Shown: in pieces, positions 27,906-48,647 of the stretch
Position numbering within the stretch: position 1 is the stretch's first letter
Layout of the letters: every line of letters starts with the position of its first letter
Origin: Macrostomum lignano
Lineage: Eukaryota
Reading direction: 5' to 3'
Assembly (NCBI GenBank): GCA_002269645.1
Contig: NIVC01004359.1
Location: 1-48,647 of the forward strand
DNA: 48,647 nucleotides
Position numbers and translations under genes: made by a program
Notes under the pieces: generated by a model
Database searches by the model: none
Told to the model about the DNA's origin: nothing
What the model saw: the letters and a program-made list of their open reading frames with translations, nothing else

Positions 27906-28212
27906 ATTAATATAACACTCGATTGGTACGAGCGTATTGTTAACAAAAGTACGCGCGGTTATATCTTCATAGGAAAAACTGGGTCCATATTCGCAATACG
28001 GAAATGATCACACTGCAGACTCGGAACTGGGAGCCGCGGTACCATGGAAAATGTATAAAAAAACGTTTTGTCTTTGACACCGCGATCGGCGCGAACTGTG
28101 CATGTCAGCATGGTGCTCCGCCGCAGCAGATATATCGCAAGACGATAAGATCCGAATCAGCTATCGCAAAAGACGTGATAACCTCTTTTAGGCAGTTAGG
28201 TACGTAATTCAA

Positions 28213-29165
28213 TACGTACCTAACTGCCTCCACCAGGACTTTCTCACTCAGAGACAGCCCCCCACACCCGAGACCTTGACCGAATCGCTCATTCTCAGCT
28301 CTACTAGAGTGCACTAAGAAGTTGCTCACGTAACCCGATCTAGCTTCGCAAAGACAAAACAATTTGATGCCATGTCGCGCTTTCTTGGAGGGAATATATT
28401 GACGAAACATGACGCGACCCCTGAACAGAACAAGCTCTTCGTCGACACTAATTTCTTTTTCTGGCATGTACACACTGCGATATATCTCAGCTACACGCGT
28501 AATAAATGGTCTTGCCTTTGCTAGCGGGTCGTTTTCATCAAAGTTGTTGCAGGCATAGAAGCGCTGCTGGCTACTGATCTGTTGGTACCTGTCCCTTGTC
28601 AGGCAAGCCAGTTGTTGGAAGAAAGGTGCATGTTGCGTAGAAATCATCTTTGCTCCAATAGTTGGCGATCTCGGGCTTTTTAACTATTCCCATGTAAAGC
28701 GACATGGCGACAAACTTCTTCATCTCGTCCACGGTCACGTCTTTCTACGCAGAGAACCTTTGAGGCAGGTTTGGCATCGGGATTGGTCCAAGCGCAGAGC
28801 TGTTGCAGTAGGTCAGCAGTCAGAAACAGCTTGAAAAACGCAGCTGGATTGTCATCGGCAGTCTCTGGCAAGTCAGGATCCACACCAGGCATTCCCAAGA
28901 ATTCGGGCTCTGCATCTGGCCATTGATCCTGCCCAGCTTCCCGTGCCACCCAAGCATCATTTGGCAAGCCTCCGGCGTCTTCATTTGGCTGGAGATGCAG
29001 GTCCTCCTCTTCTTCATCTTCACCCTCATCCGCTGTTAGCCAGCCTTCCTCCTCCTCTAGTTCGGAGTCGGTATCCGGATCAAAATGCACTTGAGCAGCC
29101 ATGACAAACACTGTCCGATACTTGGAAATTATTGCACTAAATAAAGCTGCTGATCGATGATTCAA
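28213..29165 (-). pseudogene. Decayed piggyBac-family (PGBD, DDE_Tnp_1_7) transposase, C-terminally truncated
   Basis: PAAFFKLFLT..WTN, KDVTVDEMKKFVAMSLYMGIVKKPEIANYWS, DPLAKARPF..YMPEKEISVDEELVLFRGR..RQYIPSKKARHGIKLFCLCEARSGY. Two frameshifts and a TAG at 28745-28747 where Trp is expected. Confidence 0.92.
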
Positions 29166-30611: not shown

Positions 30612-30952
30612 TCACGCCCTCAGATCCGCTTTCTTTCCATTGTCCTTTTTCAAGTCGTAGGCGGTGATAACATCCGGCATGGCTTTCTGTACGTACATCA
30701 TCGGGTCGCGAGGTCCGTCGAGCAGGAAGTGTGTTGTGAGGTGACCAACGCCCTTAACAGTGATGGAGCCCCTGGTCTCAAAGCTGTAGCCTCTCTGTTC
30801 CAGGCCTTCCCGCACGGTTCCCGTCACCTGTATGCGATCTTGAAGTCCGCTGCTCTCCATTCTTGAAGCGATGTTGACCGTGTCGCCCCAGATGTCGTAC
30901 TGGGGCTTGCGCGTGGCGATCACTCCGGCGATTACCACGCCGTGGTTCACTC
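30612..30952 (-). CDS. Adenylate cyclase last exon, C2a end
   Basis: [35 protein letters not shown]...[12 protein letters not shown]; AATAAA on the minus strand at 30384-30389. Confidence 0.96.
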
Positions 30953-33900
30953 CTGGGTTGTAAAGTGCTTAAATTTAAAGTAGAACTTGAACATACGCAG
31001 ATGCGTTACTTCTCAGTCGCAATAATTTTTACACTCGGTGGAGCAACTAACATCCTGATGTTCTTGGCATTCGACAGCTGAACAATCGCAGACAGTTTTA
31101 AGTATCTCTACATCACCACGAGAACTAAAAGTTTAGTCTATCACTTCAATCAATTTATATGGTTTTAATGCGAAAGGTGTGTGCGATTTTCGCTAAATTA
31201 CTTAAGCAGGGAAGGCACAGTTTCAATTACTTTTAAGTGTGACAACATCCCATACTCTATAAAATGTATTCATTTCAGGAAAATCTGAACAAATGACACA
31301 ATACCAAACAGACACAATTGACACAGTAGCAAACAGACACAACTGACACATTACTAAACAGACACAACTGACACAATACCAAACAGACACAACTGACACA
31401 ATACCAAACAGACACAACTGACAAAATAGCAAACAGACACAACTGACACAATACCAAACAGACACAACTGACACAATACCAAACAGACACAACTGACACA
31501 ATACCAAACAGACACAACTGACACAATACCAAACATACACAACTGACACAATACCAAACAGACACAACTGACACAATACGCTCGTAGCAAACAGACACAA
31601 CTGACACAATACGCTCGTAGCAAACAGACACAAGATACCAGAGACTAATCAGTGAAGTGGACTCACCGATGCGCATCTTGAACGAGGCGAACAGGTTGCG
31701 ATTGTGAATGCAGATGAGACGCAGCAGGGCGAGAGCAAAATCCGCTGTGTCTTCCAGGTGGCGCTGCCGTTGTTTCCTGCGCAGCTCCTGGCCGTCGCCC
31801 GGGTGCCGCTGGGTGTCGGCAGACAGGCCGGCAGCCGCCATGTAGGTGGAGCCGATAGTTTTAATTTTCTCCACGCAGCTGAACTGTCGTTGAAGATCGT
31901 CGAAATCTGAGATGATCTCGTTGAGCACTAGGCAGCAGGTCTGCTCATCGAATCTAGCCATGTCCATGTAGTACTCTGAGAAGTTGCAAATGGAAGCGAA
32001 GATCACGGTGGTCTCCCAGCAGTGCTCCGAGTAGATTTCCTGCGAGTTGAGAAAGTGCTCGGCCACGTGAGGCGGCAGGATGTTATTCACAAGCCGTTGA
32101 TTTTTTCGCTTCATCTTCTCCGTGCTCTTGTTGGCCTCGTAGGCTTGAGATTTCCACATGAAGTCAAGCCGGACGGTGATCTCCACCAGGTGAGACTGGA
32201 CCACCACGATGAGCAGAGCGGACAGGATTAACAGGTTGCAGTTGATCCACTGCAGAGGGAAATTATCCCGGTCAGCGCAGCAGTGCTTCTGCACCAAATC
32301 CACGCTGCGAAAGTCCGAATGAAAAGCGAAAAAGCTGGACAGAAGGTAGATGACGAACATGACCAGTCCGATGGCGGATTTCCACAGGAAACTGCTGTAG
32401 GTGAAGCAGGTCAGGCTGAGGATAGACAGCGAGGCCGAAAATGTTGTGTACTGGAAGTTGGGTTGGAAACGGTTTAGGGATGATTGCAATCGATAACTGG
32501 AAAATCTGTGCTGTTTGCCTATTTTGATATTGTTTCAGCTGTGTCAATTTAGTATTGAGTCTGTTTTTGTCTGTTTAGACTGTTGTGTGTATTTAGTATT
32601 GTGTCAGTTGTGTCTGTTTGGTATTGTGTCAGTTGTGTCTGTTTGGTATTGTGTCTGTTTAGACTGTTGTGTGTATTTAGTATTGTGTCAGTTGTGTCTG
32701 TTTGCTATTGTGTCTGTTTGGTAGTGTGTCAGTTGTGTCTGTTTGGTATTGTGTCAGTTGTGTCTGTTTGGTATTGTGTCTGTTTGGTAGTGTGTCAGTT
32801 GTGTCTGTTTGGTATTGTGTCTGTTTGGTAGTGTGTCAGTTGTGTCTGTTTGGTATTGTGTCTGTTTGGTAGTGTGTCAGTTGTGTCTGTTTGGTATTGT
32901 GTCTGTTTGGTATTGTGTCAGTTGTGTATATTTGGTAGTGTCGAAGCATTGATTTGGTATTGAATGCGACTCGAACACAAATACTCTGAAAGCCACAGTC
33001 AGATACTCCAAATACTACTAACAGTAGCTTAAATGCGTGCAAACTTGTCTGGCAAATTTAAATTTCACACACAGAGCTGAACTCTCACCTCGGGCATCGC
33101 CAGCTCTGCTCGATGGCAGACTCCGTCTGTCAGTGCACTGCTGCTCAGGCAGTAGGAAGTCCAGTTGCTGTCGTGTTGGCTGTTGACGTGGTCCTCCAAG
33201 TCCAAGCAACCAGTTTGTGTGAACTGTAAACGAATTCTTACGCGAAATATAAATTGCGCTTAACTTCAAAAATTCAAGGCTTGCATCAAGGTGAGCCATC
33301 TGTCGGCTATCTGTCGGTTAACAAATTTATTCGCCAACGAAGTCGAGTTGAAAAAGAGGATTTGGTTGTCCAAATCTCAAGGGGTTGCAGCCTAGTGGTC
33401 AGAGCGTCGGACACGCGACTTGAAGGTTGAGGGTTCGATTCCCGATCCCACTGGAACAATTTAATGTTCAACCCAGCTGTAAAATGGGTGCCAGCATTAG
33501 CTGGGGTAATTGAGGGTGTGTGACGACGACCCCCCCCCCAGTCCTTGGACTGAAAAGCCGTACGCATCGTTCAGATGCGCCGCGCAATAGCTGCGGCTGA
33601 GCTGTCGGTTGCACATCTGGCCCAATTATTATTTATTATTATCCAAAGATGGCAAACTTTACAGATCAGGCTTGGAGCGGCTTGTAACTAATTTGCAGGC
33701 TGTCATTGCATGCAGTTAAGTAAATATTACAAATAATTATTTCGCAAAACTGTGTTACCTTGGGAACCAAGATTGACACGAGATTAGCCACCATTCCGAT
33801 CAGTATGGAGCCGTTGACAAAAATTGACCAAATGTGTCCGCTCGCGATTTTCTGAAAAAAAAATAAAAATGTGTCAAAATGCTTACCTCTACTATGTAAG

Positions 33901-36900
33901 TAGACTAATGCGGATTTTAAATTCGCAACTCACCATTCGATCTGTTGTGAAGGCCACAGCGCAGGCGAACAGCGTGGTTAAGGTGACGAACGAGAACAGG
34001 TAAATTGGCACCATGGTCATCGAGCTGGAATGAGCGCGAGTTAATTGGTGAAAAGCATCTCATAAAACCAGCCTAAATGCTGGATTGTTTGCATTTGATT
34101 GGCATTGGGAAATGACAATAAGGGGAAAAAGGCTGAGTTGAGCTATCGACACTTCAGGATTCAAGTCGAGTGCTCTGCAAAGTTTGCAATAAGCACTTTA
34201 TGAGTCTCATTTAGAAGAGAGAGCAGGGCTCGTAACAGTTGAAAAATTATGGTCAAGTGAGAGACTTGGAAACTTCTGCAGTCTGGCTGAAGTCTCATAT
34301 CCTGGCTGTCTATGGGGATGATGAGCAGCTTTGATTAGCAGGTTGGTCCAAATTTGATGGCACTGTTGCCAAAACTAGAAATTCACTCGCTTTAACAGTT
34401 CAATATTAGTCCGCACCTCGAATCCACCGCCAGTCTGCATACCCTCAACCTGTCTACCAATCTGTGTCCCTATCTACCAATCTGTGTTCCTATCTACCAA
34501 TCTGTGTTCCTATCTACCAATATGTGTCCCTATCTACCAATCTGTGTTCCTATCTACCAATCTGTGTTCCTATCTACCAATATGTGTCCCTATCTACCAA
34601 TCTGTGTTCCTATCTACCAATCTGTGTTCCTATCTACCAATCTGTGTTCCTATCTACCAATATGTGTCCCTATCTACCAATCTGTGTTCCTATCTACCAA
34701 TCTGTGTTCCTATCTACCAATCTGTGTTCCTATCTACCAATCTGTGTTCCTATCTACCAATCTGTGTTCCTATCTACCAATCTGTGTTCCTATCTACCAA
34801 TCTGTGTTCCTATCTACCAATCTGTGTTCCTATCTACCAATCTGTGTTCCTATCTACCAATCTGTGTTCATATCTACCAATCTGTGTCCCTATCTACCAA
34901 TTTGTCTCCTTATCTTCCTATCTGTTCTCTATATCTACCAATCTAGCTCCCTATCTACCAATTTGTCTTCCTGTCCCTACCTACCAATCTGTTCTCCCAA
35001 TCTACCAATCTGTGTCCCTATCCACCAATATGTCTTCCTACCAACCTATACCAATCTGCCTCCCTATCTAGTACACATTAATTCACAATCAATTATCTAT
35101 CTCCAACTATACCCACACTGAACTTACCTACGCTGAGTCAGAATTTGAACGCAAAACGTGCCAGTGAGAAAGGCCAACAGAAGACAGCTGACTTCAATGG
35201 AGAAGTAGGGATCTCTCACGGTGCCGAACTGCAGATAGAGAGTTGCAGCGAAATGAACAAAATATATAAGGATGGTTAGGCTGTAACTATGAAGTTGACC
35301 CAGTTTATAATCCAAACTTTAACTCACACAGTGGGCAATAGTCTGACCTAGACTGTGACCTAGACTGTGACCTAGTCTGTCAACCAGCCTGTGACCCAGA
35401 CTGTGACCCAGACTGAGACCCAGACTGTGACCCAGATTACGAGTATGACCCAGACTGTGACTCAGACTGTGACCCAGACTGTGACCCGGACTGTGACCCA
35501 GACTGTGACCTAGTCTGTGACCTAGACTGTGACCCAGACTGAGACCCAGACTGTGACCCAGATTATGACCCAAACTGTGACCTAGTCTGTGACCTAGACT
35601 GTCAACCAGCCTGTGACCCAGCCTGTGACCCAGACTGAGACCCAGACTGTGACCCAGACTGTGACGTAGTCTGTCACCTAGACTGTGACGTAGTCTGTCA
35701 CCTAGACTGTGACCTAGTCTGTGACCTAGACTGTGACCCAGACTGAGACCCAGACTGTGACCCAGATTATGACCCAAACTGTGACCCAAACTGTGACCCA
35801 AACTGTGACCCAGACTATGGCTTTTATCAACAATAATCCTGATAAAAATATTCCCGACCTTCTTTTCCAGCCGGGGAAGCTTGAACCGCAGGTTGACGGG
35901 GTGGCAGTGCTCCTGGTACAAGCTGTCGATGGTATGAGACTGGATTGCCGAGCTCAACGCTTCGTTGATTACTGCATCATTGACGCTTCGAGTTCGGTTG
36001 CCGTGATCATCGACTCCCATTCTAGTGGCGATTGTTTAGAGTAGAGTAAAGTCGAGAAGAGTAGAATAGAATAGAGTAGAGTAGAGTAAAGTAGATAAGA
36101 GTAGAGTAGAATAGAGAAGAGTAGAGTAGACAAGAGTAGACTAGAGTAGAGTAGAGTAAAGTAGATAAGAATAGGGTAGAGTAGAGTAGAGTAGAGTAGA
36201 GAGTAGAGTAGACTAGACTAGACTAGACTAGACTAGAGTAGAGTAGAGTAGAGTAGAGTAGAGTAGAGTAGACTAGACTAGACTAGACTAGACTAGACTA
36301 GACTAGACTAGACTAGACTAGAGTAAACTAAAGTAGAGTAGAGTAAGGAGTAGAGTAGAATAGACTAGACTAGAGTAGACTAGACTAGAGTAGAGTAGAG
36401 AAGAGTAGAGTAGAATAGAGCAGAGAAGAAACAAGCAGACTAGAGCAGAGAGTAGAATAGACAGTAGCAAAGCACCAATGAAGCCAGGTATGCAAAAGCA
36501 AAACTGACCCAGCCACCTTTTATGAATGTGAGATGCCGGCCGCCTTCCCTGACCAGCAGGTTCTGCTGCATCGCCGCAGTGCTGAGGCTGCTGCTGCTGG
36601 TCAGCCGGCACCACCAGAAAAGTTTTCACCCGATGCTCTCTCAGATAAGCGTGCCGGCTTTCACCTTCGCCGTCCTCAAAGCTGTAATCTCCGCCGAGGC
36701 TGTCGCGGGTCACCTCGGTGATGTGCACCCGGCCAGGCCGGCCGCTGGACTCCAGGATCTCCGCCAGGTAGACGTCGCCCGACCAGACGTCGAACTGCAG
36801 TTTGTCGCGGCCGAGAACTCCGCAGATCACCGTGCCGGTGTGAATACCGACTCTCATGTCCACCGGGGCGTTGGTCATCACGCGGACTAGTCTGCCGATA

Positions 36901-39900
36901 TGTATCGATAATAGAATTAAAGCCAAGCAGATTTAAAAAATTTGCCGATATGTATCGAAGTTAAAATAAAATCCTGTCTATTATACATGGCCTATCTTAT
37001 ATAAATGTTCCCGTATATAGGGTTTGCCAATTAGGAGCCGTAGCCCAGTGGTCCAGCGCGGCGCTCTGATGTACCAGCGGCCCAGGCTCGATTCCCAGTG
37101 TAGCCACACATTAATTTGGGGCTAAATTGGAATCTCGGCTTGGCTCTGCTCGGGCAATTAACGCCCTTGAGAACCAACCCCCCCCAAGGCGCAGTGAAGT
37201 GTACATGCCTAACGATAAATAAAGTCGGGGCCACTGTACACTCCTGTGTGAGTGCCTGTGCGTATGACTGCGTACGTGTCTGGGCGCTTGTGTGCCTGCT
37301 CAGGGGAGTCGGCGGAATGGGCAGTAATGCCTCTCGCCGGTTGTGTGACAATTTCGCCTAAAGTGCGCTTAAAGTCCCCTTTGCTGGCTGCCTCTAGGTT
37401 AGCCAGTTTAGGAGTTTTACCGATATGTATCGAAAGTCAATTTAAATTACACGTTCAATATGTATCGAAGATTGAGTGGGAATAACACTCATTTTCAAAC
37501 ATTGCCGATATGTATCAAAACTGAGCTTACTCATAAATCATTTTCAAGCTCGTACTCGTATTTTAATAAGTCATGAGCATAAACTGACACTTTAAAATTT
37601 TATTAGCCCGCCCAGGCAGTCATATTTTATCGATGATGAAGAGCTGCTCCACAGTCCAATAAATTATGCTGGAGTTCGGCCTGAAGCCGGGGCTGCCGTC
37701 CGAAATTCGGGACTCCCGCTGAATCTGGGCCGCTGTGCCCAGGATTTGGACCGCAACAGCATGTACAGTCTGAGCCATGTGGGCTGGCCTTCATGGGTGT
37801 GAATTGACAGACCCCCCCCAAGCACCAAACGAACGCGTTTACGCACAAAATCCAACCAAGGGCCGTGTGGTGCAAAAGTCAAAAATAAAATTTCAAGCTC
37901 ATGAAACTTTAAGCTTGTGAAAGTCGCACGAAAAAAAACTGGTGCTGATGATATCGAATGTCACATCGTCGAAGGCACTAAACTTTAATAATCTTAATTA
38001 TTAAAACGTTTGAGGCCCACTCACGATATGGTGGAGATCATGTCCAAGCCCATCTCAACGCAGCACTTGGCGTGGTCGGCCCTGGGTTCCGGCAGTCCGG
38101 ACACGCAGTAGTAGCAGTCACCCAGCAGCTTGATCCGCAGGCAGTTGTTGCTTTCAGCCAGCTGGTCGAATCTGGCAAACAGAACGTTGAGCAGCCGGAC
38201 GATGAACTCCGGGTCGTTCTGACGACACAGCGTGGTGAAACCGCAGATGTCCGCAAACAGAATGCTGGAAATGCCGAGTCATCTTGGTTCAATTCTGTGC
38301 ATTCAAAAAACTAATCATTGATTAGTTATCGAGCCAGCATGACACACTGTAGCACTGACGCATAGTTCTCATTCATGGTCATTGTGACACGAGGCGAAGT
38401 CGGAATTTTGCAGGAAATTTGAAGAGGCCATCAAGATAAGTCGAGTGCTTAGGTCGAAGTGCATAAGTAACTCTCTGGGATTTTAGAGATGCCGACAGCC
38501 TTGAGAGCTGAAAATTAGCTGCTTAAGGATTAAGAAGTTCTTAATGACGACAGGTAAAAGTCTCAGTCAGAGCCGGCTACGGCCTGTTGACCTGAGTTTG
38601 AGGGAGTTATTCGCACTGCATAGTCTCTGCAGTTCCGCCCTTTGCTTGCCTCATCCTCTTTAGGCTCTCCTTCTCCGTCTAAAGCTGTCTGTTTTCACTT
38701 CGTGACTCCGACTTTGAATTTTCATTTCCAGCATCTTTGCTCGTCCCCTCTTGTTCCTCGTTCAGCCTCCACCAGAGATTAATATAGCCTGCATAATAAG
38801 TGTACACCAGGCAATGCAGCTACACCTGCCAAAGTCAACGAATCAAAAAAACAGCCCGACCCAGCTTGTGAAATGCAAACATGCAGCTACTGTATGCATG
38901 AAGTAGAAAGTTCCACTTTAACTATTTTATATTTGTACGAATTCTCTTTTGGCTACCAGTTTAGAAGATGTTTAATCTAGTGGGTAAAGTGGGTATAGTA
39001 AGCCTCAGCATTAGCTTCAGAAGTTGCTAAAATCAAAATTAGATTGTATCTTACTTAAGTACGAAAGGTACTTAAATATACTTCAGTATTATTCATTTTT
39101 CGCACTCAGTCATGCGTACAAAAAATTCAGATGTACATTTGGCCTTCGCTGGGGGGGGGACGAAATTCAGATGTACATTTGGCCTTCGCGGGGGGGGACG
39201 AAATTCAGATGTACATTTGGCCTTCGCGGGGGGGGACGAAATTCAGATGTACATTTGGCCTTCGCGGGGGGGATGAAATTCAGATGTACATTTAGCCTTC
39301 GCGGGGGGACGAAATTCAGATGTACATTTGGCCTTCGCGGGGGGGACGAAATTCAGATGTACATTTGGCCTTCGCGGGGGACGAAATTCAGATGTACATT
39401 TGGCTATATACTTGATCTTGGTCTATATACCAAGAAATTGATTAATTAAACAAAACATTAAAAACAAAACACGTCTTAGAAACCGAATGTTGCTACTCAC
39501 CTAACATTTTCATGTCTCTGTATGTAAACTTTGTTAAACATCGATCTGTGCGCTGGATTCTTCTCGGGATGTAGCAGCGGAGACGCCACGTACTCCGGCA
39601 GAAGCGACAGTATCAAACGGTCCTTGGGTAAATCAGTTTGTTAATTTTACTATTACATTTTTATACAGAAGAACGTTACAATCGTCATTTTTTACTCCTC
39701 TTGACTGAGCGGGTGCTGTTTATCCCGAATCGATTTAAGGATCTGTGGTGACCACTAGGAATGATTCGAAAGTTGCTACGCAAGAAAACCATTGAAGAAA
39801 AAGTAATTAATTCCCTTTGGTTTTTGCAGGGCTTCTCGTGTGAGGAAAAGTATCAGCAAGAAATCATTGAGTAGAATAGACTCACTTCGGCTGCCTGGAT

Positions 39901-42610
39901 ACTTTAAGCTCTGGGCTTGAACTTCGATCTTATTGTGGCCAATGTGACAGCAGACCCTAATGCATTCGCTCTCATTTCCTTTGAGTTTATAAGGCTTCCT
40001 GTTTTGATTTTTGTCTTATGGATTTTATGCTTGTTAGTCTCATCAAAGTGAAATATTCGCCTTCACTTCCCGCCATTTCTCTTTGCAGAGTTTCCCTAGC
40101 CGGCGCTCACCAGCTTCTCCATTTCCAGCTTGGCGCGCAGTCCGGCTTCGTAATAGCGCCTGGTTTCCAGGAAAGTCTGCCGGCGGCCCATCTCCACGGG
40201 GCCGTGCACGAAAACGCCCACTATGTTTGCGGCGAGCAAGTAGAACGCGTTGGCCGCAAGCTGCATGCAAGGGCAATGGGGGTTCAATGTACACCAGCCA
40301 GCTGCTACGGGGTGAAGAATTCAATATACATTGGCCATGTCACTGTGGGGTGGGAGTTCAATGTACATTGGCCAGCCACTGGGGGATAGGAGTTTAATGT
40401 ACATTGGCCAGCCACTGGGGGGATAATGTACATTGGCCAGCCACAATGTACATTGGCCAGCCGCTGGGAGTGCTGTACATTGGCCAGCCACTGGATGGGA
40501 TGTTCAGTTTACATTGGCCAGCCACTGGAGGGATGGGAGTTCAATGTACATTGGCCAGCCACTGGGGGGATGGGAGTTTAATGTACATTGGCCAGCCGCT
40601 AAAGGAAAGGAAATTTAAAGTAAATTATCCAGGGTATGGCAAATTGTTGTACCGATTAGCCAATCAATCTGTCAATGCGAGTTACGTGATTCAATATTAC
40701 GGAAACTAAAGGTCGATATGACGATATCAGAACAGAAAAGTGACAAAAAAGCTTTTATCACACACAAAAATTTTGACTACCACTACCAGCTCGTCACGAA
40801 TGTGATTTCTAATCCGTGAATTAAGGAACCAGTTTGAGAGCTTAATCTCTACAGAAAACTTGCTAGATCCGATCCAAAAGAATGCAGAAATGTTCTGTCT
40901 ACCTTCAGCCTGCGAGCGTCAGTCGATGTGACTGACTCGGGGACGGGGTGGACTCCGGCCGCCCCCCCCCCCAGGGGCATGAGAGGCAGGACTTCTCACA
41001 GTTGAGTGCGCAGGCGAGTGGACGACAGGCCTTTTGCCCGTGATCTTGTCGGGCCTAATTAGAGCGAGGCGGCCGTCAGGGTGTGAAAACGGGAGAATGT
41101 GGAGCAAAGATAAGATCCCGCTCGCTTCATTCAGCTGCTCAGTTCCTACTGGCACTGATACATTTTCTGACGTGACCTCCAACCAATAAAAGCTGCATTT
41201 TCGTGCAAGGTTATTTGGCTTAGGCTGACATCGCGTTTAAAAAGCAGTGAGCTGTTTACGCTTGAGCAGTCATCAATTTGAGAACGGTCGCCCGCGTGTC
41301 CGGTGGATATTCAGGTGGGGGCGAAGTGACCTCGGATGACCTTTTAGTGCTTACCTCGAATGGCAATCATCAAGGTTTGAGAAACCTTGATAATTGCCAT
41401 AATTGGGAGAAAATCACACGCTCTTCTAATTGCACTCAAACGTGGAACTGTTGAAAAATTACCCGTTTACTCTGACTACAACCCGGGTGTAGCGGCCAAA
41501 ATCCCAAGATTTCGACGCTACCCTAATTTATTAAATCAAATCGGGATTCGGGCAGACAAGATGATTTATTTGCTGCTGAGCCATTGAGTGTCTCTGAAAT
41601 CTGGTTGAAAAGCAATGAGCCTACTCGCAGAATTGCTACAAAGTGTAGCGATGGCGAAGATGCTGGTTCAAGCGAGAGACGCCACCCCACTCCAGCTCGC
41701 GTACCCGAGCACCGAAATCCGGTCGGTTCATTCCAGAAATTCTAGACAACAGGTGCAGCATCATGATGAGGCCGCAGCAGGCCAGCAGGCTGCGAACACG
41801 CAACGGCAAGAACAGGTAGGCGATGACCGTCATCAGCGAGCTGGTGAACAACCCGCTGCTCGGCTTCCAGCACAGCGGATCTGGCTCCTCGCCGATGCGA
41901 ATGACGCTGGCGCCCTGCAGCAGCAGGAAGCAGATGGCCAACCCGTAGCTCAGGTGCTGCTGCCGGGCCAGGCCAACGCGACAGCGCAGCATACCAATCA
42001 GGAGACCGCTGAAGCCGGCGAAGGCGACAGTGGAGAGGCTCAGGTGCAGCAGGGTGTTCTCAGATGGACCGCGGGCCGTCTGCGGCAGCTGCGTGACGGC
42101 GGAACCGGCGCTCAGAAGCGTCAGCGTTGCCACCAGAACGAGCAGGGAGCGATGGTTCAGCCGGCGAAAGTACATCTGGTAGAGCTGCTCGAGCTCGGCG
42201 CCTGGGAACACCTTGGAAGAGAAGAGGCACTTGAACAGGATGGCCAGGAAGCGCCAACTCTCAGCGCAGTTCGCCGGCGGCTTGGTGTGCAGCAGGTCGC
42301 TGATGGTGTCCCGGTTCGGGTCCAGGCGCTGCAGGGCAGAGCTGTGCGACGATTCGGAGTCTCTGGGCCGAGTGTTCCATCGACCGCTGCTACTGCCAAC
42401 CTTGCTGCCGCCGCGCGCACTGGCGGTGCCGCCGCCTTCGCTGCCACCGATTCTGACAATTTTCGTCGTTCTCTGAAGTCGCTGCCAGCCCGACGGGCGA
42501 TCCGGGTTTCTTCGAAGCATTCGGGCGACTTCCTTCGGCGCCGATATTTGGTCGCCGTTGCCGACTGAAACTGGATCGGCGTCCACCATCGGGGCCGGGT
42601 GGACGCTCAT
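30612..42610 (-). CDS. ADCY: Transmembrane adenylate cyclase (ADCY5/6-like), 11 coding exons, about 1165 aa
   Basis: complement join(41705-42610,40111-40260,39501-39622,38025-38264,36517-36891,35859-36021,35128-~35316,33934-34024,33089-33223,31667-32450,30612-30952). C1a [11 protein letters not shown] and GDCYY (both metal-binding Asp); C2a [13 protein letters not shown] and [16 protein letters not shown] (Lys/Asp/Asn/Arg intact). One junction is unresolved. Confidence 0.95.
31294..31632. repeat. 25-bp minisatellite ACACAATACCAAACAGACACAACTG (array A)
   Basis: About 13 units; reverse complement of the array at 32535-32940. Confidence 0.95.
31667..32450 (-). CDS. Adenylate cyclase exon 10 (784 nt): last TM helices and C2a first half
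   Basis: YTTFSASL...[10 protein letters not shown]...[70 protein letters not shown]. Confidence 0.96.
32535..32940. repeat. 25-bp minisatellite CAGTTGTGTCTGTTTGGTATTGTGT (array B, inverted relative to array A)
   Basis: The unit is the exact reverse complement of the array A unit. Confidence 0.95.
33089..33223 (-). CDS. Adenylate cyclase exon 9, extracellular loop
   Basis: [45 protein letters not shown]|Y; phase 0/0. Confidence 0.85.
33381..33640 (+). mobile_element. SINE family 1, copy 2 (internal deletion, ATT-rich tail)
   Basis: GCAGCCTAGTGGTCAGAGCG..GGGTTCGATTCCC..shared body..ATTATTATTTATTATTAT. Confidence 0.88.
33934..34024 (-). CDS. Adenylate cyclase exon 8, TM helix
   Basis: [30 protein letters not shown]; phase 2 in, phase 0 out, consistent with both neighbours. 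Confidence 0.85.
34450..35070. repeat. 20-bp minisatellite (TATCTACCAATCTGTGTTCC)
   Basis: Tandem periodicity. Confidence 0.95.
35128..35316 (-). CDS. Adenylate cyclase exon 7, two TM helices (5' boundary unresolved)
   Basis: [52 protein letters not shown]; strong donor AG|gtaagt. All candidate acceptors are phase 2 while the upstream donor is phase 0. Confidence 0.7.
35340..35820. repeat. 12-bp minisatellite (CCCAGACTGTGA), reading (HSLG)n on the minus strand
   Basis: Tandem periodicity. Confidence 0.95.
35859..36021 (-). CDS. Adenylate cyclase exon 6, C1b
   Basis: [43 protein letters not shown] resembles ADCY5/6 KRMGF..EFLGRAIDARSIDRL..EH..F..LEKK. Confidence 0.88.
36040..36455. repeat. 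(GTAGA)n/(CTAGA)n compound microsatellite
   Basis: Direct inspection. Confidence 0.93.
36517..36891 (-). CDS. Adenylate cyclase exon 5, C1a second half
   Basis: [70 protein letters not shown]. Confidence 0.96.
37034..37410 (+). mobile_element. tRNA-derived SINE family 2, copy 1
   Basis: A box TAGCCCAGTGG, B box GGCTCGATTCC; body GGGCTAAATTGGAATCTCGGCTTGGCTCTGCTCG..CCTAACGATAAATAA is shared with 48464-48647. The 3' end is approximate. Confidence 0.8.
38025..38264 (-). CDS. Adenylate cyclase exon 4, C1a catalytic Asp residues
   Basis: [58 protein letters not shown]. Confidence 0.97.
39123..39405. repeat. ~37-bp minisatellite (GAAATTCAGATGTACATTTGGCCTTCGCGGGGGGGAC)
   Basis: About 8 units. 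Confidence 0.93.
39501..39622 (-). CDS. Adenylate cyclase exon 3
   Basis: [27 protein letters not shown] matches ERLLLSVLP..MFHKIYIQ.H.NVS. Confidence 0.94.
40111..40260 (-). CDS. Adenylate cyclase exon 2, TM6 and coiled coil
   Basis: [50 protein letters not shown]. Confidence 0.92.
40285..40600. repeat. ~36-bp minisatellite (TTCAATGTACATTGGCCAGCCACTGGGGGATGGGAG)
   Basis: About 9 degenerate units. Confidence 0.9.
41705..42610 (-). CDS. Adenylate cyclase exon 1, N-terminus and first TM cluster
   Basis: MSVHPAP...[27 protein letters not shown] (ADCY5/6 N-terminal motif) and hydrophobic helices; donor CGG|gtacgc. Confidence 0.88.
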
Positions 42611-43894
42611 TGCCGTCCTCAGGATGAAGTTTCTGTGGCTTCTGAGTGCTGATTTAATTGGATCCTGCAGCAAGATAGAAATGGAGTAGTTTTGTTGGTG
42701 CTCTACAGGTATTAGCGGGTTACCGTATTCAACAACAACGCAAAAAAGGTCTTGTGTTTTCACAAAGTATGAGCAGCATCACAGGGCAAACGTCGCGTGT
42801 GTTCAAAGTACTCAAAGTACTTATAAAGGTAATTCACAACGAAAATCGGTTAAAAAGTCACAAGGAAGACCTCAATCTTCTTTAGAAGATCATCTTCGTT
42901 CACGGAAAAAAAATCATGCGGACGCACAGACAGACAGAACCAATTCTGTATATTTCAGGTAGGGACGATTACCGGTATTCAAATAGGAATACCTACGAAT
43001 TTTCAAGCGTTGTAGCTGAAACCTTGATTCAGACTTGGCTTTGCCGCCGCTTCCGAACTCGAAGAGCTCTTTCTTCTTTTGCCATGCAACTCGGGCAGAT
43101 GGAGAGCTGTTTAAATAGCCGTTAAAGCCTCCCTCCAGCTTCGATTAAATGCATTGGTGCAATGTTGCCGCCCCAGCTCGGCTGTTTGCTCACCAGAGTA
43201 GATAAGGAAGCAGGGTCGGACTTGAGCAAGTGAGGCTCTTAGCAACAGCTGAGGCCAAACTAAGATTTCGTATGAGATTTGATAATAAAGAGAACACGTG
43301 TGTTTCTGAGATTCTGGGCCACCCACATCCTTAGGCTTATTCTACTCGTACTCGCGTAGACGTGCCGCATCGATATGAATTTTGTCAGGCCCAGCTTCCC
43401 AGCTGCATCACACATTGGAGTAGTCCTTCAGACTCGATAGGCAACAGTCTGACTGAGGTTGGACTTAGCATAAATCCCGAGCTGATACCGCTGGGCCTTC
43501 GAACTCAGACTTTATGAAGTCTTTTCCCGTGAAACATAAGTCAACTCTGGTTGAGCAAGCATGAGATAAGAGCACAAAACTGCTGAGGCAAAATGTCAGG
43601 CATCGTGGTGTGATGGAAAATCTGTTCTCGGAAGCTTATCTGTTACTGAAATTCGAAAGACAACAAAAATTTCGCTTACAGTGTTGATGAAGCGGGATTC
43701 TGTGCGGTATAAGAAAGAAAAGCACAGAAATGCAATTGAAAATTTTATGCACGCGGGCTTCGCACATTCAAAAATCAATTTCGATGATTGCGGTGAGGTC
43801 ATCGCCACAATCAGTCATTGTCATCTCGTTCAACGGTTACTCAGATTGCTGAATAAGTAGTAGAAATTATTTATTAAAGCTGCTTGCAAATTAC

Positions 43895-44016: not shown

Positions 44017-44465
44017 TCACTCCGAACGCTTTTTTAGGATGTCCCGGTCCAGCATGAAGTCGGGTACCTGGTGAAGCGTTTCTTCAGAATGCCCCGGTCC
44101 AGCATGAAGTCGGGGTACCTGGTGAAGCGCTTCTTCAGAATGCCACGGTCCAGCATGAAGTCGGGGTACCTGGTGAAGCGTTTCTTCAGAATGCCACGGT
44201 CCAGCATGAAGTCGGGGTACCTGCTGAAGCGTTTCTTCAGAATGCCCCGGTCCAGCATGAAGTCGGGGTACCTGGTGAAGCGTTTCTTCAGAATGCCCCG
44301 GTCCAGCATGAAGTCGGGGTACCTGGTGAAGCGTTTCTTCAGAATGCCGGTCCAAGCATGAAGTCGGGGTACCTGGTGAACCGCTTATCAAGGTGCTTGA
44401 TGCCGTCGTCCTGGTGAACGTTCTTCGTATCATCATGGTGCTTCTCTGCACCAGTTACATCCAAT
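44017..44465 (-). CDS. Neuropeptide precursor exon 2: 7 x F[T/S]RYPDFMLDR[G/D]IL flanked by KR/KKR (two apparent frameshifts)
   Basis: Acceptor ttctcccttgcag|; 51-bp in-frame unit; the terminal unit keeps ILKKR through five synonymous codon changes; ends KKRSE-TGA. Confidence 0.85.
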
Positions 44466-45395: not shown

Positions 45396-45889
45396 GGCAA
45401 AGCACTTTCTATAGTCAGAAGCGGAGCCTCTTCAGAAAGTTTCTTTCAGAAAGAGGGTCTTTTTAATTGTTGAGAGACTCTATCGCTGGGAAGCAGATGG
45501 CTCGGTAATGAAGACAAATGCGCTTGGAATAAAGGAAAAAGTTTTTATGCCAGCGACTCGGCTCTCTGGGCTAGAATGCGCCGTTATAAAGGGAAGCGTC
45601 ACTGGGAACTCGCGCGCCTCCACACCCCGTCCCCTGCAGCAGTCGCAGCCATCGCATCCGCGCCTTCTCTCATCTTCCCACCCTTTCATTGGCTGCTGGG
45701 CCTCCTCGCCATATTCCTATGCCTTTGCGGGAAAGAAATTGAGAAGCGTTTGAAGAATCGCCCGGTCTAAAGATGATTAATTGACAGGGTCAGAAAAGCG
45801 ACTTCATCCTGGCCATCTTAATTTAAGAATTGAGGGATGACCTGAAAGCGTATTGAAACTCAAAATTTGAAACTTAAAAGTTAAGCGAT

Positions 45890-46750
45890 GGGCGCTGCGG
45901 TGGGATTTTAACCCTCAGGTTGCAGAGGTGGGATGTGAACCCTCGGGTGGCAGCGGTGGGATGTGAACCTCGGGTGGCAGCGGTGGGATGTGAACCCTCA
46001 GGTGGCAGCGGTGGGATGTGAACCTCTCGGGTGGCAGCGGTGGGATGTGAACCCTCGGGTGGCAGCGGTGGGATGTGAACCCTCGGGTGGCAGCGGTGGG
46101 ATGTGAACTCTCGGGTGGCAGAGGTGGGATGTGAACCCTCAGGTGGCAGCGGTGGGATGTGAACCCTCAGGTGGCAGAGGTGGGATGTGAACCCTCAGGT
46201 GGCAGAGGTGGGATGTGAACCCTCAGGTGGCAGCGGTGGGATGTGAACCCTCAGGTGGCAGAGGTGGGATGTGAACCCTCGGGTGGCAGCGGTGGGATGT
46301 GAACTCTCGGGTGGCAGAGGTGGGATGTGAACCCTCAGGTGGCAGAGGTGGGATGTGAACCCTCAGGTGGCAGAGGTGGGATGTGAACCCTCAGGTGGCA
46401 GAGGTGGGATGTGAACCCTCAGGTGGCAGAGGTGGGATGTGAACCCTCAGGTGGCAGAGGTGGGATGTGAACCCTCAGGTGGCAGAGGTGGGATGTGAAC
46501 CCTCAGGTGGCAGAGGTGGGATGTGAACCCTCAGGTGGCAGCGGTGGGATGTGAACCCTCAGGTGGCAGAGGTGGGATGTGAACCCTCGGGTGGCAGCGG
46601 TGGGATGTGAACTCTCGGGTGGCAGCGGTGGGATGTGAACTCTCGGGTGGCAGAGGTGGGATGTGAACTCTCGGGTGGCAGAGGTGGGATGTGAACCCTC
46701 AGGTGGCAGAGGTGGGATGTGAACTCTCGTGTGGCAGCGGTGGGATGTGA
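45890..46750. repeat. 28-bp minisatellite (CCCTC[A/G]GGTGGCAG[A/C]GGTGGGATGTGAA), about 30 copies, resembling the tRNA-Leu 3' end
   Basis: Tandem periodicity seen directly; the tRNA similarity comes from a remembered tRNA-Leu sequence. Confidence 0.95.
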
Positions 46751-47999
46751 GTCTTCAACCTTTATTCAAGATCGTCTCAAATTCAGAAGCCACATAATAT
46801 TCACTTACTTCTCGGTACCTCGATAATATGCTGAAAATATAATTTTTTCTCACCCCTCCCACAAAACAAGTGCACCACTGAAACAGAAAATAATTGATTT
46901 GGCTAGAGAAATCAATCACTTTATTGTGGGTGGCAGTGATGTATCTATTTTATTCCCTTCAATTCTTTCTCTCTCTCTACTTGTAATCCCGACCCTTGTT
47001 CCCCCAGTTTCCTTCTATATCGTTTCCTTCCAGCATCCATCGCGAAACAGATGAAGCGAGCGGGCATAAACTGCCTGGATATTTCAGCTCGCACAGACAG
47101 GCAGGAGATCCCAGAACAATCCCTGTTCCCCCGACCCCAATTGCACTATTTGATCAGCAAGGGGAGGCAGCACACGGCTTGCTCTCTTTATCAGCCCCTG
47201 CTCGCGCTAATTGAGTTATAAGCGGACAGGAATGATGCAGGGAGTTGAGCTCTTGTCTGACCCTGTCAGGACTGAGGCAATTTAAATCCGGGCCCTGAGA
47301 GCCCAGAGCCAGGTTTAAAGTTTCTCGCTCCTGTGTGATGACTTTTTCGACTAAAAACTTGCTTAAAAAAGCTCATCGGCTAAACTTGTTCCGGACTTGT
47401 TACTGTAGGGGAGACTTTCTGAGTTTGTTTGAGTTCTCTCATAGCTACATGCTCGCAAAAAAAGATTATTAAAGTTTCAAGTGAACTTTTGCAACACTGT
47501 CCCGATGGGGCGTGGATAATCTGAGATTATTCAGACCCAGCGAACAAAAATCCATCATCCAGACCAGACACTGATAGCGGTGTTTGCAGTTGAAATATTG
47601 TGTCAATATGTACATTTAATTAAGCAAATCGAAAAGTTTCACCTGATTGGTCTGAGAAATGATGGTGTCCGCGTTCTCATTTGAAAAACAAGTTTGACTA
47701 ATCGGTCGGTCTGACTATTTTGAGCTGAACTCAAACAATGTTTTTTCCATTTCTCCCACAGCGAGCGGTAAGGCAGATCCGCTCCGTTCCGCTGACTCCC
47801 GAACACGCGCTCACACAGGGTGTACCGGTACAGCTGCCCTGACTTTATTTATCGTCAGGCATGTGCACTTGGAGGTGTTGGCCAAGGACCACTAGGAACA
47901 CTTCGTTAGTCTAGTCTAGGCTAGTAGTCCTTGGTGTTGGCTCTCATGAGTGTGAATCGTACGACAAGACTGACCAATTTTGATGTGTCCGCTCACGGA

Positions 48000-48185
48000 A
48001 GGTTGAGCGGCATTCAGAGAGTTGAGCAGCATACAGAGAGTTGAGCAGCATACAGAGAGTTGAGCAGCATTCAGAGAGTTGAGCAGCATACAGAGAGTTG
48101 AGCAGCATACAGAGAGTTGAGCAGCATACAGAGAGTTGAGCAGCATACAGAGAGTTGAGCAGCATACAGAGGGTTAAGCAGCATA
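48000..48185. repeat. 19-bp minisatellite (CAGAGAGTTGAGCAGCATA)
   Basis: About 9 units. Confidence 0.93.
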
Positions 48186-48463
48186 CCTGTATAGCTAGCA
48201 TTAGTCACGTGCCGGTAAACAGAGCGAAATTAAGATAATTGGCCTCCGGCATCAGAACTCAATGCCAGCCAGCAAGTATAAATACATATCGCCTAATTAG
48301 CAAGTCTGAAGCATTGTTAGAAACCAAAGTTGATTCATCCCAATGCGAGTAGAAATATCTGGGAATTATATTTTAAAAGGCAGTCGCATTTGCCTATTTT
48401 CAGCCTTTATGCATTCACCTCTTCTGTTTGCTAATCATGCGAGTGTCACAGGTGCACAAATGA

Positions 48464-48647
48464 GGGGCGTGGCCTAGCAGGCTAGCGCGGCGTTCTGGTG
48501 TGCCAGCGGCCCAGGCTCGATTCCAAGTGCAGCTACAGATTATTTAGGGCTAAATTGGAATCTCGGCTTGGCTCTGCTCGTGCAATTCAGCCTTAAGGGC
48601 AACCCCAAGGCACAGTGCAGTGTACACGCCTGCCTAACGATAAATAA
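48464..48647 (+). mobile_element. SINE family 2, copy 2 (truncated by the window end)
   Basis: Colinear with 37034-37220. Confidence 0.8.

What the first reader, a model, noticed from the sequence alone, without database searches (positions are those of the whole stretch)
45890..46750. Minisatellite whose 28-bp unit matches tRNA-Leu positions 49-76: a tandem array of primer-binding-site-like sequences
Seen: the reverse-complement unit is GAGGGTTCACATCCCACCGCTGCCACC[C/T]. From memory, the cytosolic tRNA-Leu 3' end including CCA is GTGGGTTCGAATCCCACCGCTGCCACCA, giving 24/28 identity. The unit length equals the span from the first T-stem base to the end of CCA. The CC after the discriminator base is not encoded in eukaryotic tRNA genes, which suggests an origin by reverse transcription of mature tRNA. 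On the + strand each GCGG-variant unit gives GGTGGCAGCGGTGGGAT, 17 of the 18 nt of a tRNA-Leu PBS. The B box is broken (GTTCAC). The array lies about 300 bp upstream of the putative neuropeptide promoter. Inference: it is an amplified LTR-element PBS or tRNA retro-fragment, and a transcript could bind or mimic 3' tRNA fragments.
Basis: partly seen in the sequence, partly recalled or inferred. Interest (0 to 1): 0.7.

Follow-up and report, generated by a model that had tools for sequence, protein, structure and literature searches.

The report
Flatworm minisatellite derived from tRNA-Leu tail
A 30-copy, 28-bp tandem repeat in the flatworm Macrostomum lignano really does descend from the last 28 bases of a leucine tRNA, but it looks like one more neutral minisatellite in a very repeat-rich genome, not a working element.

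Summary
Window 45899-46750 is a 28-bp minisatellite (30.4 copies, 95% matches). Its best units match published human tRNA-Leu-AAG plus CCA at 25/28. This compares with at most 22/28 in 1000 shuffles, at most 20/28 in 1000 random window 28-mers, and 14-18/28 for 19 other minisatellite units in the window. The same tRNA 3' 18-mer was sequenced as a small RNA in a snail. The window is a whole contig of Macrostomum lignano Mlig_3_7, a genome with 21% LTR retrotransposons and 15% simple/tandem repeats. The resemblance runs beyond the 18-nt primer-binding footprint into the T arm. It includes CC after the discriminator, and full CCA only in the outermost degenerate unit. No tRNA gene, LTR, gag/pol remnant, annotated gene or special fold accompanies the array. 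tRNA-like variants sit at the left end and a derived variant fills the centre, as expected for slippage or unequal exchange. Best reading: a neutral minisatellite seeded by a tRNA-Leu 3' fragment, probably reverse-transcribed. The proposed tRNA-fragment decoy or mimic function and the "neuropeptide promoter" context have no support. New member of a known kind; low-to-moderate interest.

The parts
45889..45944 (-). Two degenerate left-edge units. In tRNA sense (- strand) the outermost reads TGAGGGTTAAAATCCCACCGCAGCGCCC+A. It keeps A58 of the T loop and ends in CCA in exact tRNA register (complement of TGG at 45889-45891). Unique flank follows.
   Evidence: 21/28 and 23/28 identity to tRNA-Leu-AAG positions 48-75.
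45945..46115 (-). Left block, units 1-6. All are the tRNA-like GCGG variant, including the two best units (46032-46087; 25/28 to the tRNA) and the only length variants (27 and 29 bp).
46116..46731 (-). Main body, units 7-28. It is dominated by the derived GAGG-CCC-A unit (12 copies; a pure run at units 14-21, 46312-46535). A five-unit variant motif occurs at units 9-13 and again at 20-24, marking a segmental duplication inside the array.
   Evidence: Each unit is 23-24/28 to the tRNA.
46732..46756 (-). Truncated, diverged right-edge unit (TGGCAGCGGTGGGATGTGAGTCTTC), GCGG type. Beyond it the flank shows no similarity to tRNA positions 1-47.
   Evidence: flank alignment scores 10 and 12, below the shuffle mean of 13.2.

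Best explanation
This is a neutral minisatellite whose founding unit was a fragment of about 28-30 nt homologous to the 3' end of cytosolic tRNA-Leu(AAG): T arm, 3' acceptor strand, discriminator A and CC(A). The tRNA sense is on the - strand and the primer-binding-site sense is on the + strand.

The fragment most likely entered the DNA through reverse transcription of a CCA-bearing molecule. That could be the primer-binding side of an LTR retrotransposon whose copy ran on into the T arm of the primer tRNA, or a cDNA of a tRNA 3' fragment. These two cannot be separated with the data here.

Replication slippage and unequal exchange then amplified it to about 30 copies. These processes operate at very many sites in the Macrostomum lignano genome. 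A derived C-to-A variant (GAGG) was homogenised through the centre, while tRNA-like variants persist at the edges.

Shown: the homology, the array architecture, and the absence of tRNA, TE or gene features. Inferred: the reverse-transcribed origin, the amplification mechanism and the lack of function.
For: - Homology: 25/28 to the published tRNA-Leu-AAG+CCA, against a shuffle maximum of 22, a random 28-mer maximum of 20, and 14-18 for the 19 other minisatellite units.
- A 17-nt exact run, ATCCCACCGCTGCCACC, equals the conserved 3' tRF of human and snail minus the final A.
- The match continues past the 18-nt PBS footprint at 8/11.
- CC follows the discriminator in all units, and CCA is in register at the outermost unit. 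CCA is not templated in eukaryotic tDNA, and CCA-bearing 3' ends match the PBS rather than tDNA.
- Edge-versus-centre gradient: units 1-6 and unit 29 are GCGG, and the centre is pure GAGG. A five-unit variant motif recurs.
- Comparing edge and internal units puts the ancestral T loop at TTCAAAT, a canonical loop, so A58-to-C arose inside the array.
- Genome background: 21% LTR retrotransposons and 15% simple/tandem repeats. About a third of this contig is tandem arrays.
- Orthologous arrays on the duplicated contig share their units but differ up to 2.4-fold in copy number.
- tRNA-derived SINE-like copies lie nearby, so retroposition of tRNA-like templates occurs in this genome.
- No sign of function: no tRNA, no Rfam family, folding no better than shuffles, no protein or gene model.
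Against: - The host's own tRNA-Leu genes and their 3' trailers were not available, so the comparison rests on human tRNA and a snail small RNA.
- CC could come from a gene trailer by chance (about 1/16).
- The A of CCA is seen only in one degenerate unit.
- No LTR, target-site duplication, poly(A) or gag/pol remnant marks a retro-insertion.
- Other genomic copies, which could show the unit is part of a larger repeat family, could not be searched.
- The homeologous copy of the locus was out of reach.
- Absence of function is inferred without expression or small-RNA data.
Confidence: 0.55

Rival explanations
1. DNA-level origin. The seed was the 3' third of a genomic tRNA-Leu(AAG) gene or pseudogene, and the CC after the discriminator is simply the first two bases of its trailer. 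Slippage amplified a 28-bp segment, and no reverse transcription was involved.
For: The match extends through the T arm at 25/28, as expected from a tRNA body and not from an 18-nt PBS. No retroelement hallmarks flank the array. Tandem repeats traced to a tRNA gene ancestor have been described in plants (reference seen).
Against: CC in all units and CCA in register at the edge unit have about a 1/16 to 1/64 chance from a random trailer. Eukaryotic pol III trailers are usually T-rich (general knowledge). Neither flank retains similarity to tRNA positions 1-47. There is no tRNA gene in the window.
Confidence: 0.22
2. A functional element. Transcripts of the + strand act as a multi-site decoy for tRNA-Leu 3' fragments or for the tRNA primer of LTR elements; or - strand transcripts mimic such fragments; or the array is a cis-regulatory or recombination element upstream of the adenylyl cyclase gene.
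For: Twelve sites have 17/18 and seventeen have 16/18 complementarity to the conserved 3' tRF. 3' tRFs are known to target PBS sequences. The array lies about 3.1 kb upstream of the cyclase's N-terminal exon. The majority unit resembles the human hypervariable minisatellite sequence beyond shuffles, score 18 against a maximum of 16.
Against: The most tRNA-like variant is being replaced by a mismatched one in the array centre, the opposite of selection for pairing. There is no structure signal. The array is one of about 30 unrelated arrays in 48.6 kb. No expression evidence exists. Neighbouring arrays vary freely between duplicates.
Confidence: 0.05
3. Pure 18-nt PBS relic. The seed was only the primer-binding site of a decayed LTR retrotransposon, and the extra similarity to the T arm is fortuitous.
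For: The longest exact run (17 nt) coincides with the PBS footprint. The B-box/T-loop part is the less conserved part. LTR elements make up 21% of the genome, so PBS copies vastly outnumber tRNA-Leu genes.
Against: 8/11 identity in the adjoining T-arm segment is unlikely by chance, about 1e-3 by my binomial estimate. No LTR lies to the left and no gag/pol to the right. The base preceding GG is A or G instead of the canonical T in all internal units.
Confidence: 0.12
4. Chance resemblance of a G+C-rich minisatellite unit to a tRNA, found because many arrays and many possible targets were available.
For: An unrelated metagenome 18-mer hit also fell in a tRNA T arm.
Against: With rotation, strand and target all left free, 0 of 1000 shuffles and 0 of 1000 random 28-mers exceed 22, and no other array exceeds 18, against the observed 25.
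Confidence: 0.03

Closest known systems
Primer-binding site (PBS) of LTR retrotransposons and retroviruses
   Same: The + strand carries [A/G]GGTGGCAGCGGTGGGAT. This is 17/18 complementary to the tRNA-Leu(AAG) 3' end, including the CC of the non-templated CCA.
   Different: It is present 30 times in tandem instead of once. TGG is complete only at the outer edge. The complementarity runs on into the T arm. No LTR precedes it and no gag/pol follows.
Tandem repeats and satellites derived from tRNA genes (plant case of Benslimane et al. 1986, NAR 14:8111)
   Same: A tandem array whose monomer is traceable to a tRNA sequence.
   Different: Here only the 3' third of the tRNA is present and it includes CC(A). 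The unit is minisatellite-sized at 28 bp. I saw only the citation; the paper is not held, so details come from memory of the title.
Satellites and minisatellites born from short tandem repeats inside transposable elements (for example Ogre 3'UTR repeats, Vondrak et al. 2020)
   Same: A short piece of mobile-element-related sequence is amplified in tandem.
   Different: In that case the element context is still visible next to the arrays. Here no element context remains.
Classical G-rich hypervariable minisatellites (Jeffreys core and 33.15 sequence)
   Same: Unit length, G-rich strand asymmetry, edge-versus-centre variant gradient and internal segmental duplications. The majority unit contains CAGGTGGCAGAGGTGGG, which resembles tandem 33.15 (score 18 against a shuffle maximum of 16).
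   Different: The organism is a flatworm, and the human motif's recombination machinery is not known to apply to it. The resemblance is weaker for the ancestral GCGG variant (24/500 shuffles reach its score).
3' tRNA fragments of tRNA-Leu-AAG (tRF-3001a / tRF-Leu-AAG; mis-annotated as miR-1260 or miR-1280)
   Same: The - strand of each GCGG unit contains ATCCCACCGCTGCCACC, the first 17 nt of the 18-nt tRF.
   Different: Those are processing products of mature tRNA, not products of a genomic array. No evidence exists that this array is transcribed.
tRNA-derived SINEs
   Same: They are tRNA-related sequence dispersed by retroposition. Copies of such an element lie in the same window.
   Different: SINEs keep the 5' tRNA head with A and B boxes. 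The array has only the 3' part with a damaged B box, and it matches the local SINE-like element's T-arm/acceptor part at only about 16/28 (my count).

Membership tests
Minisatellite (VNTR-type tandem repeat) | Head-to-tail tandem copies of a unit of about 10-100 bp | tested here: met
   Period 28, 30.4 copies, 95% matches, 0% indels. 31 phased matches against 0.07 expected.
Minisatellite (VNTR-type tandem repeat) | Internal variant units with patterns of unequal exchange or slippage | tested here: met
   Six variant types. GCGG sits at the edges and a pure GAGG run fills the centre. A five-unit motif repeats at units 9-13 and 20-24, and 27- and 29-bp units are present.
Minisatellite (VNTR-type tandem repeat) | Copy-number variation between alleles or duplicates | not testable with these tools
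   The homeologous contig could only be read up to window-equivalent 33.8 kb. Eight other arrays there do vary, for example 356 vs 151 and 105 vs 49 copies.
tRNA gene or pseudogene | Cloverleaf with anticodon arm, recognisable by tRNA finders | tested here: not met
   ARAGORN finds 0 genes in the window. There is no Rfam tRNA hit even at E<=10 on the array. The flanks show no similarity to tRNA positions 1-57.
Sequence derived from the tRNA-Leu(AAG) 3' end | Similarity to tRNA-Leu(AAG) positions 48-76 beyond shuffled and local controls | tested here: met
   25/28 against a shuffle maximum of 22, a random maximum of 20, and 14-18 for the other arrays. The reference sequence comes from print. 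The host's own tRNA was not available.
LTR-retrotransposon primer-binding site | About 18 nt complementary to a tRNA 3' end, starting with TGG | tested here: inconclusive
   17/18 at 12 sites. The first base is A or G instead of T in internal units. TGG is complete only at 45889-45891 in a degenerate unit that is 15/18.
LTR-retrotransposon primer-binding site | Lies directly after a 5' LTR, with a matching 3' LTR elsewhere | tested here: not met
   There are no direct or inverted repeats other than the tandem arrays in 42.8-48.6 kb. The contig ends 1.9 kb to the right, so a distant 3' LTR cannot be excluded.
LTR-retrotransposon primer-binding site | gag/pol coding sequence downstream | tested here: not met
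   No Pfam domain is found in six frames of 46751-48647 at E<=0.05. No protein relative is found for any flank ORF of 45 aa or more.
tRNA-derived SINE | 5' tRNA-related head with intact A and B boxes, body and tail; dispersed copies | tested here: not met
   Only the 3' tRNA part is present. The B box is altered (GGTTCACATCC versus GGTTCGANNCC). There are no copies of the unit elsewhere in the window.
3'-tRF target / decoy RNA | Transcribed, and bound by tRFs or Argonaute/PIWI | not testable with these tools
   No expression or small-RNA data are accessible. Only sequence complementarity is shown.

The most novel reading that the evidence does not exclude
The array is transcribed. Its roughly 30 tandem sites, each 16-17/18 complementary to the tRNA-Leu(AAG) 3' end, would then act as a decoy that titrates 3' tRNA fragments or the tRNA primer used by Leu-primed LTR retrotransposons. 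This would be a genomic 'PBS sponge' that modulates retrotransposon control in a genome that is one-fifth LTR elements.
Probability: 0.04. Interest if true: 0.7.

Novelty: new member of a known kind. Interest (0 to 1): 0.28.

Why it matters
If the reading is right, this locus is a clean example of how a minisatellite is born. A tRNA 3'-end fragment of about 28 nt, probably carried into DNA by reverse transcription, became the seed of a 30-copy array. The ancestral variants are still visible at the edges.

It also shows that the many minisatellites of Macrostomum lignano can occasionally be traced to a specific source molecule. It would matter more only if transcripts of the array were shown to interact with tRNA fragments or with retrotransposon priming, and nothing here supports that.

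A practical point for annotators: such arrays will attract small-RNA reads from tRNA-Leu 3' fragments, which are the same sequences once mis-annotated as miR-1260/1280. They could therefore be mistaken for small-RNA loci.

Tried and rejected
- **Rfam.** The whole window at gathering thresholds and the array at E<=10 gave no tRNA or any other credible family.
- **ARAGORN.** No tRNA in the window or in the homeologous locus.
- **Hairpin or T-arm-like folding as a driver or function.** Three-unit segments of both strands fold no better than shuffles, with z between -0.9 and +2.0.
- **Public collections.** The 18-mer core gave 0 viral contigs and 8 single metagenome hits with no arrays. One hit lies in a degenerate duplicate of a bacterial tRNA-Ser whose intact sister has a canonical T arm. 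I judged it coincidental.
- **Reaching the homeologous copy of the array on NIVC01004123.1.** The cyclase first exon has no protein on record. A composite of all flank ORFs has none either. Three ATG ORFs within 10 kb are not on record. L002 ends at window-equivalent 33.8 kb.
- **LTR context.** No LTR-like repeats and no Pfam domains in the right flank.
- **Idea that the G57/A58 mismatches are a reverse-transcriptase signature at m1A58.** Rejected, because the edge unit keeps A58, so A58-to-C arose within the array.
- **Idea that the local SINE-like element is the source of the unit.** Rejected, at only about 16/28 in the homologous register (my count).
The 51-bp repeat at 44039-44380 is open in several frames and has KKR motifs. 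It has no homolog and only a sub-threshold spurious Pfam hit.

Full report
**1. What is there**

TRF reports a tandem array at 45899-46750 with period 28, 30.4 copies, 95% matches, no indels and consensus GGTGGGATGTGAACCCTCAGGTGGCAGA. Reading the sequence and splitting it on the TGGCAG anchor gives 29 units:
- 27 units are exactly 28 bp, one is 27 bp and one is 29 bp.
- Two more degenerate units lie at the left edge, from 45889.
- A truncated, diverged unit lies at the right edge, to about 46756.

Three positions vary, giving six main unit types. The commonest, with 12 copies, is TGGCAGAGGTGGGATGTGAACCCTCAGG. Thirteen units carry GCGG and sixteen carry GAGG. The core 18-mer occurs 31 times in phase, against 0.07 expected, and nowhere else in the window.

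**2. Is the tRNA resemblance real?**

- Human tRNA-Leu-AAG-1-1 ends ...GGAGGCGTGGGTTCGAATCCCACCGCTGCCA.
- Its 18-nt 3' fragment with CCA is ATCCCACCGCTGCCACCA.
- The identical 18-mer was sequenced as a small RNA in the snail Biomphalaria glabrata. This 3' end is therefore conserved from mammals to spiralians.

I then let every rotation and both strands of the unit slide over seven published class II tRNAs:

| Query | Best score out of 28 |
|---|---|
| GCGG unit | 25 (tRNA-Leu-AAG+CCA, canonical positions 48-75) |
| Majority GAGG unit | 23 (same place) |
| 1000 shuffles of the unit | mean 16.65, sd 0.99, max 22 |
| 1000 random window 28-mers | max 20 |
| 19 other minisatellite units in the window | 14-18 |

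As a PBS, 12 sites are 17/18, 17 sites are 16/18 and 2 sites are 15/18. The three mismatches to the tRNA are T50 to A, G57 to A and A58 to C. They break one T-stem pair and the B-box/T-loop consensus.

**3. What organism and what context**

The ceramide-synthase-like ORF at 23670-24797 is on record on exactly two contigs of GCA_002269645.1, and the window is the whole contig NIVC01004359.1. That assembly is Macrostomum lignano Mlig_3_7. The published description of the genome gives 21% LTR retrotransposons, 15% simple and tandem repeats, and 180 Mb of duplicated blocks at least 95% identical.

The window fits this description:
- About 30 distinct arrays occupy roughly a third of its 48.6 kb (my hand sum).
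- It holds a TLC-domain gene, a piggyBac transposase remnant, and a multi-exon class III adenylyl cyclase on the - strand (exons between 30612 and 42763).
- The cyclase is not in the protein collection.

The array lies about 3.1 kb upstream of the cyclase's N-terminal exon.

The 'neuropeptide' context has no support. The 51-bp repeat at 44039-44380 and every other ORF of 45 aa or more between 42.8 and 48.6 kb have no relative among 5.8 billion proteins. Pfam gives only one spurious sub-threshold hit.

**4. What it is not**

- It is not a tRNA gene. ARAGORN finds none. Rfam finds nothing at gathering thresholds, and the tRNA model does not fire on the array at E<=10. The flanks show no similarity to tRNA positions 1-57, with scores below the shuffle mean.
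- It is not a recognisable LTR element. There are no LTR-like direct or inverted repeats within 42.8-48.6 kb. No Pfam domain appears in any frame of the 1.9 kb to the right, where gag would lie. No protein relatives exist for the flanks.
- It is not a structured RNA or DNA. Three-unit segments of either strand fold no better than shuffles.
- It is not found as an array in viral or metagenome collections. One metagenome 18-mer hit lies in a decayed duplicate of a bacterial tRNA-Ser. This is a coincidence, though it shows the unit's first half is generically T-arm-like.

**5. Origin**

Three features bear on the source.

(a) The similarity does not stop at the 18-nt PBS footprint. Eight of the next eleven bases, covering the T loop and the 5' T stem, also match. 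By my binomial estimate this is about 1e-3 by chance. A bare PBS is therefore not enough, and part of the tRNA body was copied.

(b) Every unit has CC after the discriminator A. The outermost left unit reads ...CCCACCGCAGCGCCC-A, so CCA is in exact register before unique flank begins. Eukaryotic tRNA genes do not encode CCA. CCA-bearing 3' ends match PBS sequences and not tDNA. This favours a reverse-transcribed source, but only moderately. CC alone has about a 1/16 chance from a trailer, and the A rests on one degenerate unit.

(c) Comparing edge and internal units, the ancestral T loop was most likely TTCAAAT, a canonical loop. A58 to C therefore arose inside the array. I dropped the idea that the mismatch is a reverse-transcriptase signature at m1A58.

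I could not separate the two possible sources: an LTR-element PBS copy that ran on into the primer tRNA, or a cDNA of a tRNA 3' fragment. Copies of a dispersed element with a tRNA-like head lie at about 37045-37215 and 48462-48640, and a third, more distant one lies near 33395-33560. So tRNA-related retroposition does occur in this genome. Their T-arm/acceptor region matches the unit at only about 16/28 and is not its source.

**6. Growth and dynamics**

The most tRNA-like units (25/28) are units 4-5. Units 1-6 and the last unit are all GCGG, and the centre (units 14-21) is a pure run of the derived GAGG-CCC-A type. The five-unit variant motif ACA-ACA-CCA-ACG-CTG recurs at units 9-13 and 20-24. 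This is the usual footprint of slippage and unequal exchange, with older variants stranded at the edges.

The duplicated contig (L002) is 99.1-99.6% identical to the window in unique DNA. Its orthologous arrays keep the same units but differ in copy number:

| Array | Window | L002 |
|---|---|---|
| (TGTC)n | 356 | 151 |
| 16-mer | 105 | 49 |
| (GTA)n | 139 | 118 |

So arrays in this region predate the duplication and are unstable. By analogy the same is likely for the 28-bp array, but its homeolog could not be reached.

**7. Function**

Nothing indicates function. The variant that pairs best with the tRNA 3' end is being displaced by a mismatched one. That is the opposite of what selection for tRF or primer binding would produce.

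The majority unit resembles the human hypervariable minisatellite 33.15 sequence more than shuffles do, at score 18 against a maximum of 16. The ancestral variant does not stand out, with 24/500 shuffles reaching its score. This may say something about which variants spread, or it may just reflect G-richness. I record it as an aside.

The decoy or mimic idea remains possible in principle, since 29 sites have 16/18 or better complementarity. I give it about 4-5%.

**8. Comparison with known things, and verdict**

tRNA-derived tandem repeats (citation), TE-derived tandem repeats that become satellites, PBS-tRNA complementarity and 3' tRFs are all established. This locus is a new and rather neat member of that known kind, in a genome already known for abundant tandem repeats.

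- Interest is low to moderate.

Noticed in passing
window 37045-37215 (+), 48462-48640 (+), and more distantly 33395-33560 (+): Copies of a dispersed element with a tRNA-like head (GG.GCCGTAGCC.AGTGGTC.AGCGCGGCG...GGCTCGATTCC...). The first two are clearly homologous over about 170 nt. It is probably a tRNA-derived SINE family of M. lignano. ARAGORN and Rfam do not call them tRNAs. Local alignment to human tRNA-Leu-CAG scores 28 against a shuffle maximum of 24.
   Followed up: partly
whole window; L002: About 30 unrelated micro- and minisatellite arrays fill roughly a third of the 48.6-kb contig. Orthologous arrays on the duplicated contig NIVC01004123.1 keep unit and position but differ in copy number up to 2.4-fold: (TGTC)n 356 vs 151, and the 16-mer AGGGGCTTTAGCACCA 105 vs 49. 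Unique DNA between them is 99.1-99.6% identical.
   Followed up: partly
window 30612-42763 (- strand): A multi-exon class III transmembrane adenylyl cyclase. Pfam Guanylate_cyc hits at 30612-30950, 31275-32489 and 36318-36926, and AC_N at 41636-42763. Its introns are packed with minisatellites. Its first exon has no counterpart in the 5.8-billion-protein collection, so the gene appears unannotated in this assembly.
   Followed up: partly
window 44039-44380: A 51-bp repeat (6.7 copies, 96% matches) that is open in several frames on both strands and encodes ...ILKKRFTRYPDFMLDRG... on the - strand. No homolog exists in the protein collection and there is no credible Pfam hit, so it is probably another non-coding minisatellite.
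   Followed up: partly
window 46116-46731 (majority units): The derived majority unit contains CAGGTGGCAGAGGTGGG. This resembles tandem copies of the human hypervariable minisatellite 33.15 sequence AGAGGTGGGCAGGTGG beyond 500 shuffles (18 against a maximum of 16). The ancestral tRNA-like variant does not (13; 24/500).
   Followed up: partly
window 23670-24797 (+) and 28105-29165 (-): An intronless 375-aa TLC-domain (ceramide synthase-like) ORF that is identical on both duplicated contigs. Its closest named relatives are only about 40% identical (annelid, spider, bivalve), and one unnamed relative is 72% identical. Next to it lies a decayed piggyBac-type transposase (DDE_Tnp_1_7).
   Followed up: partly
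L009 504-594 and 3470-3559 (metagenome contig Ga0210003_1022083): Two tRNA-Ser(cga) kb apart. The second is a decayed duplicate whose T arm (GAGGGTTCACATCCCAC) happens to equal the flatworm unit over 21 nt. The intact copy has GAGGGTTCAAATCCCTC. Rfam does not pass the decayed copy at its gathering score.
   Followed up: yes
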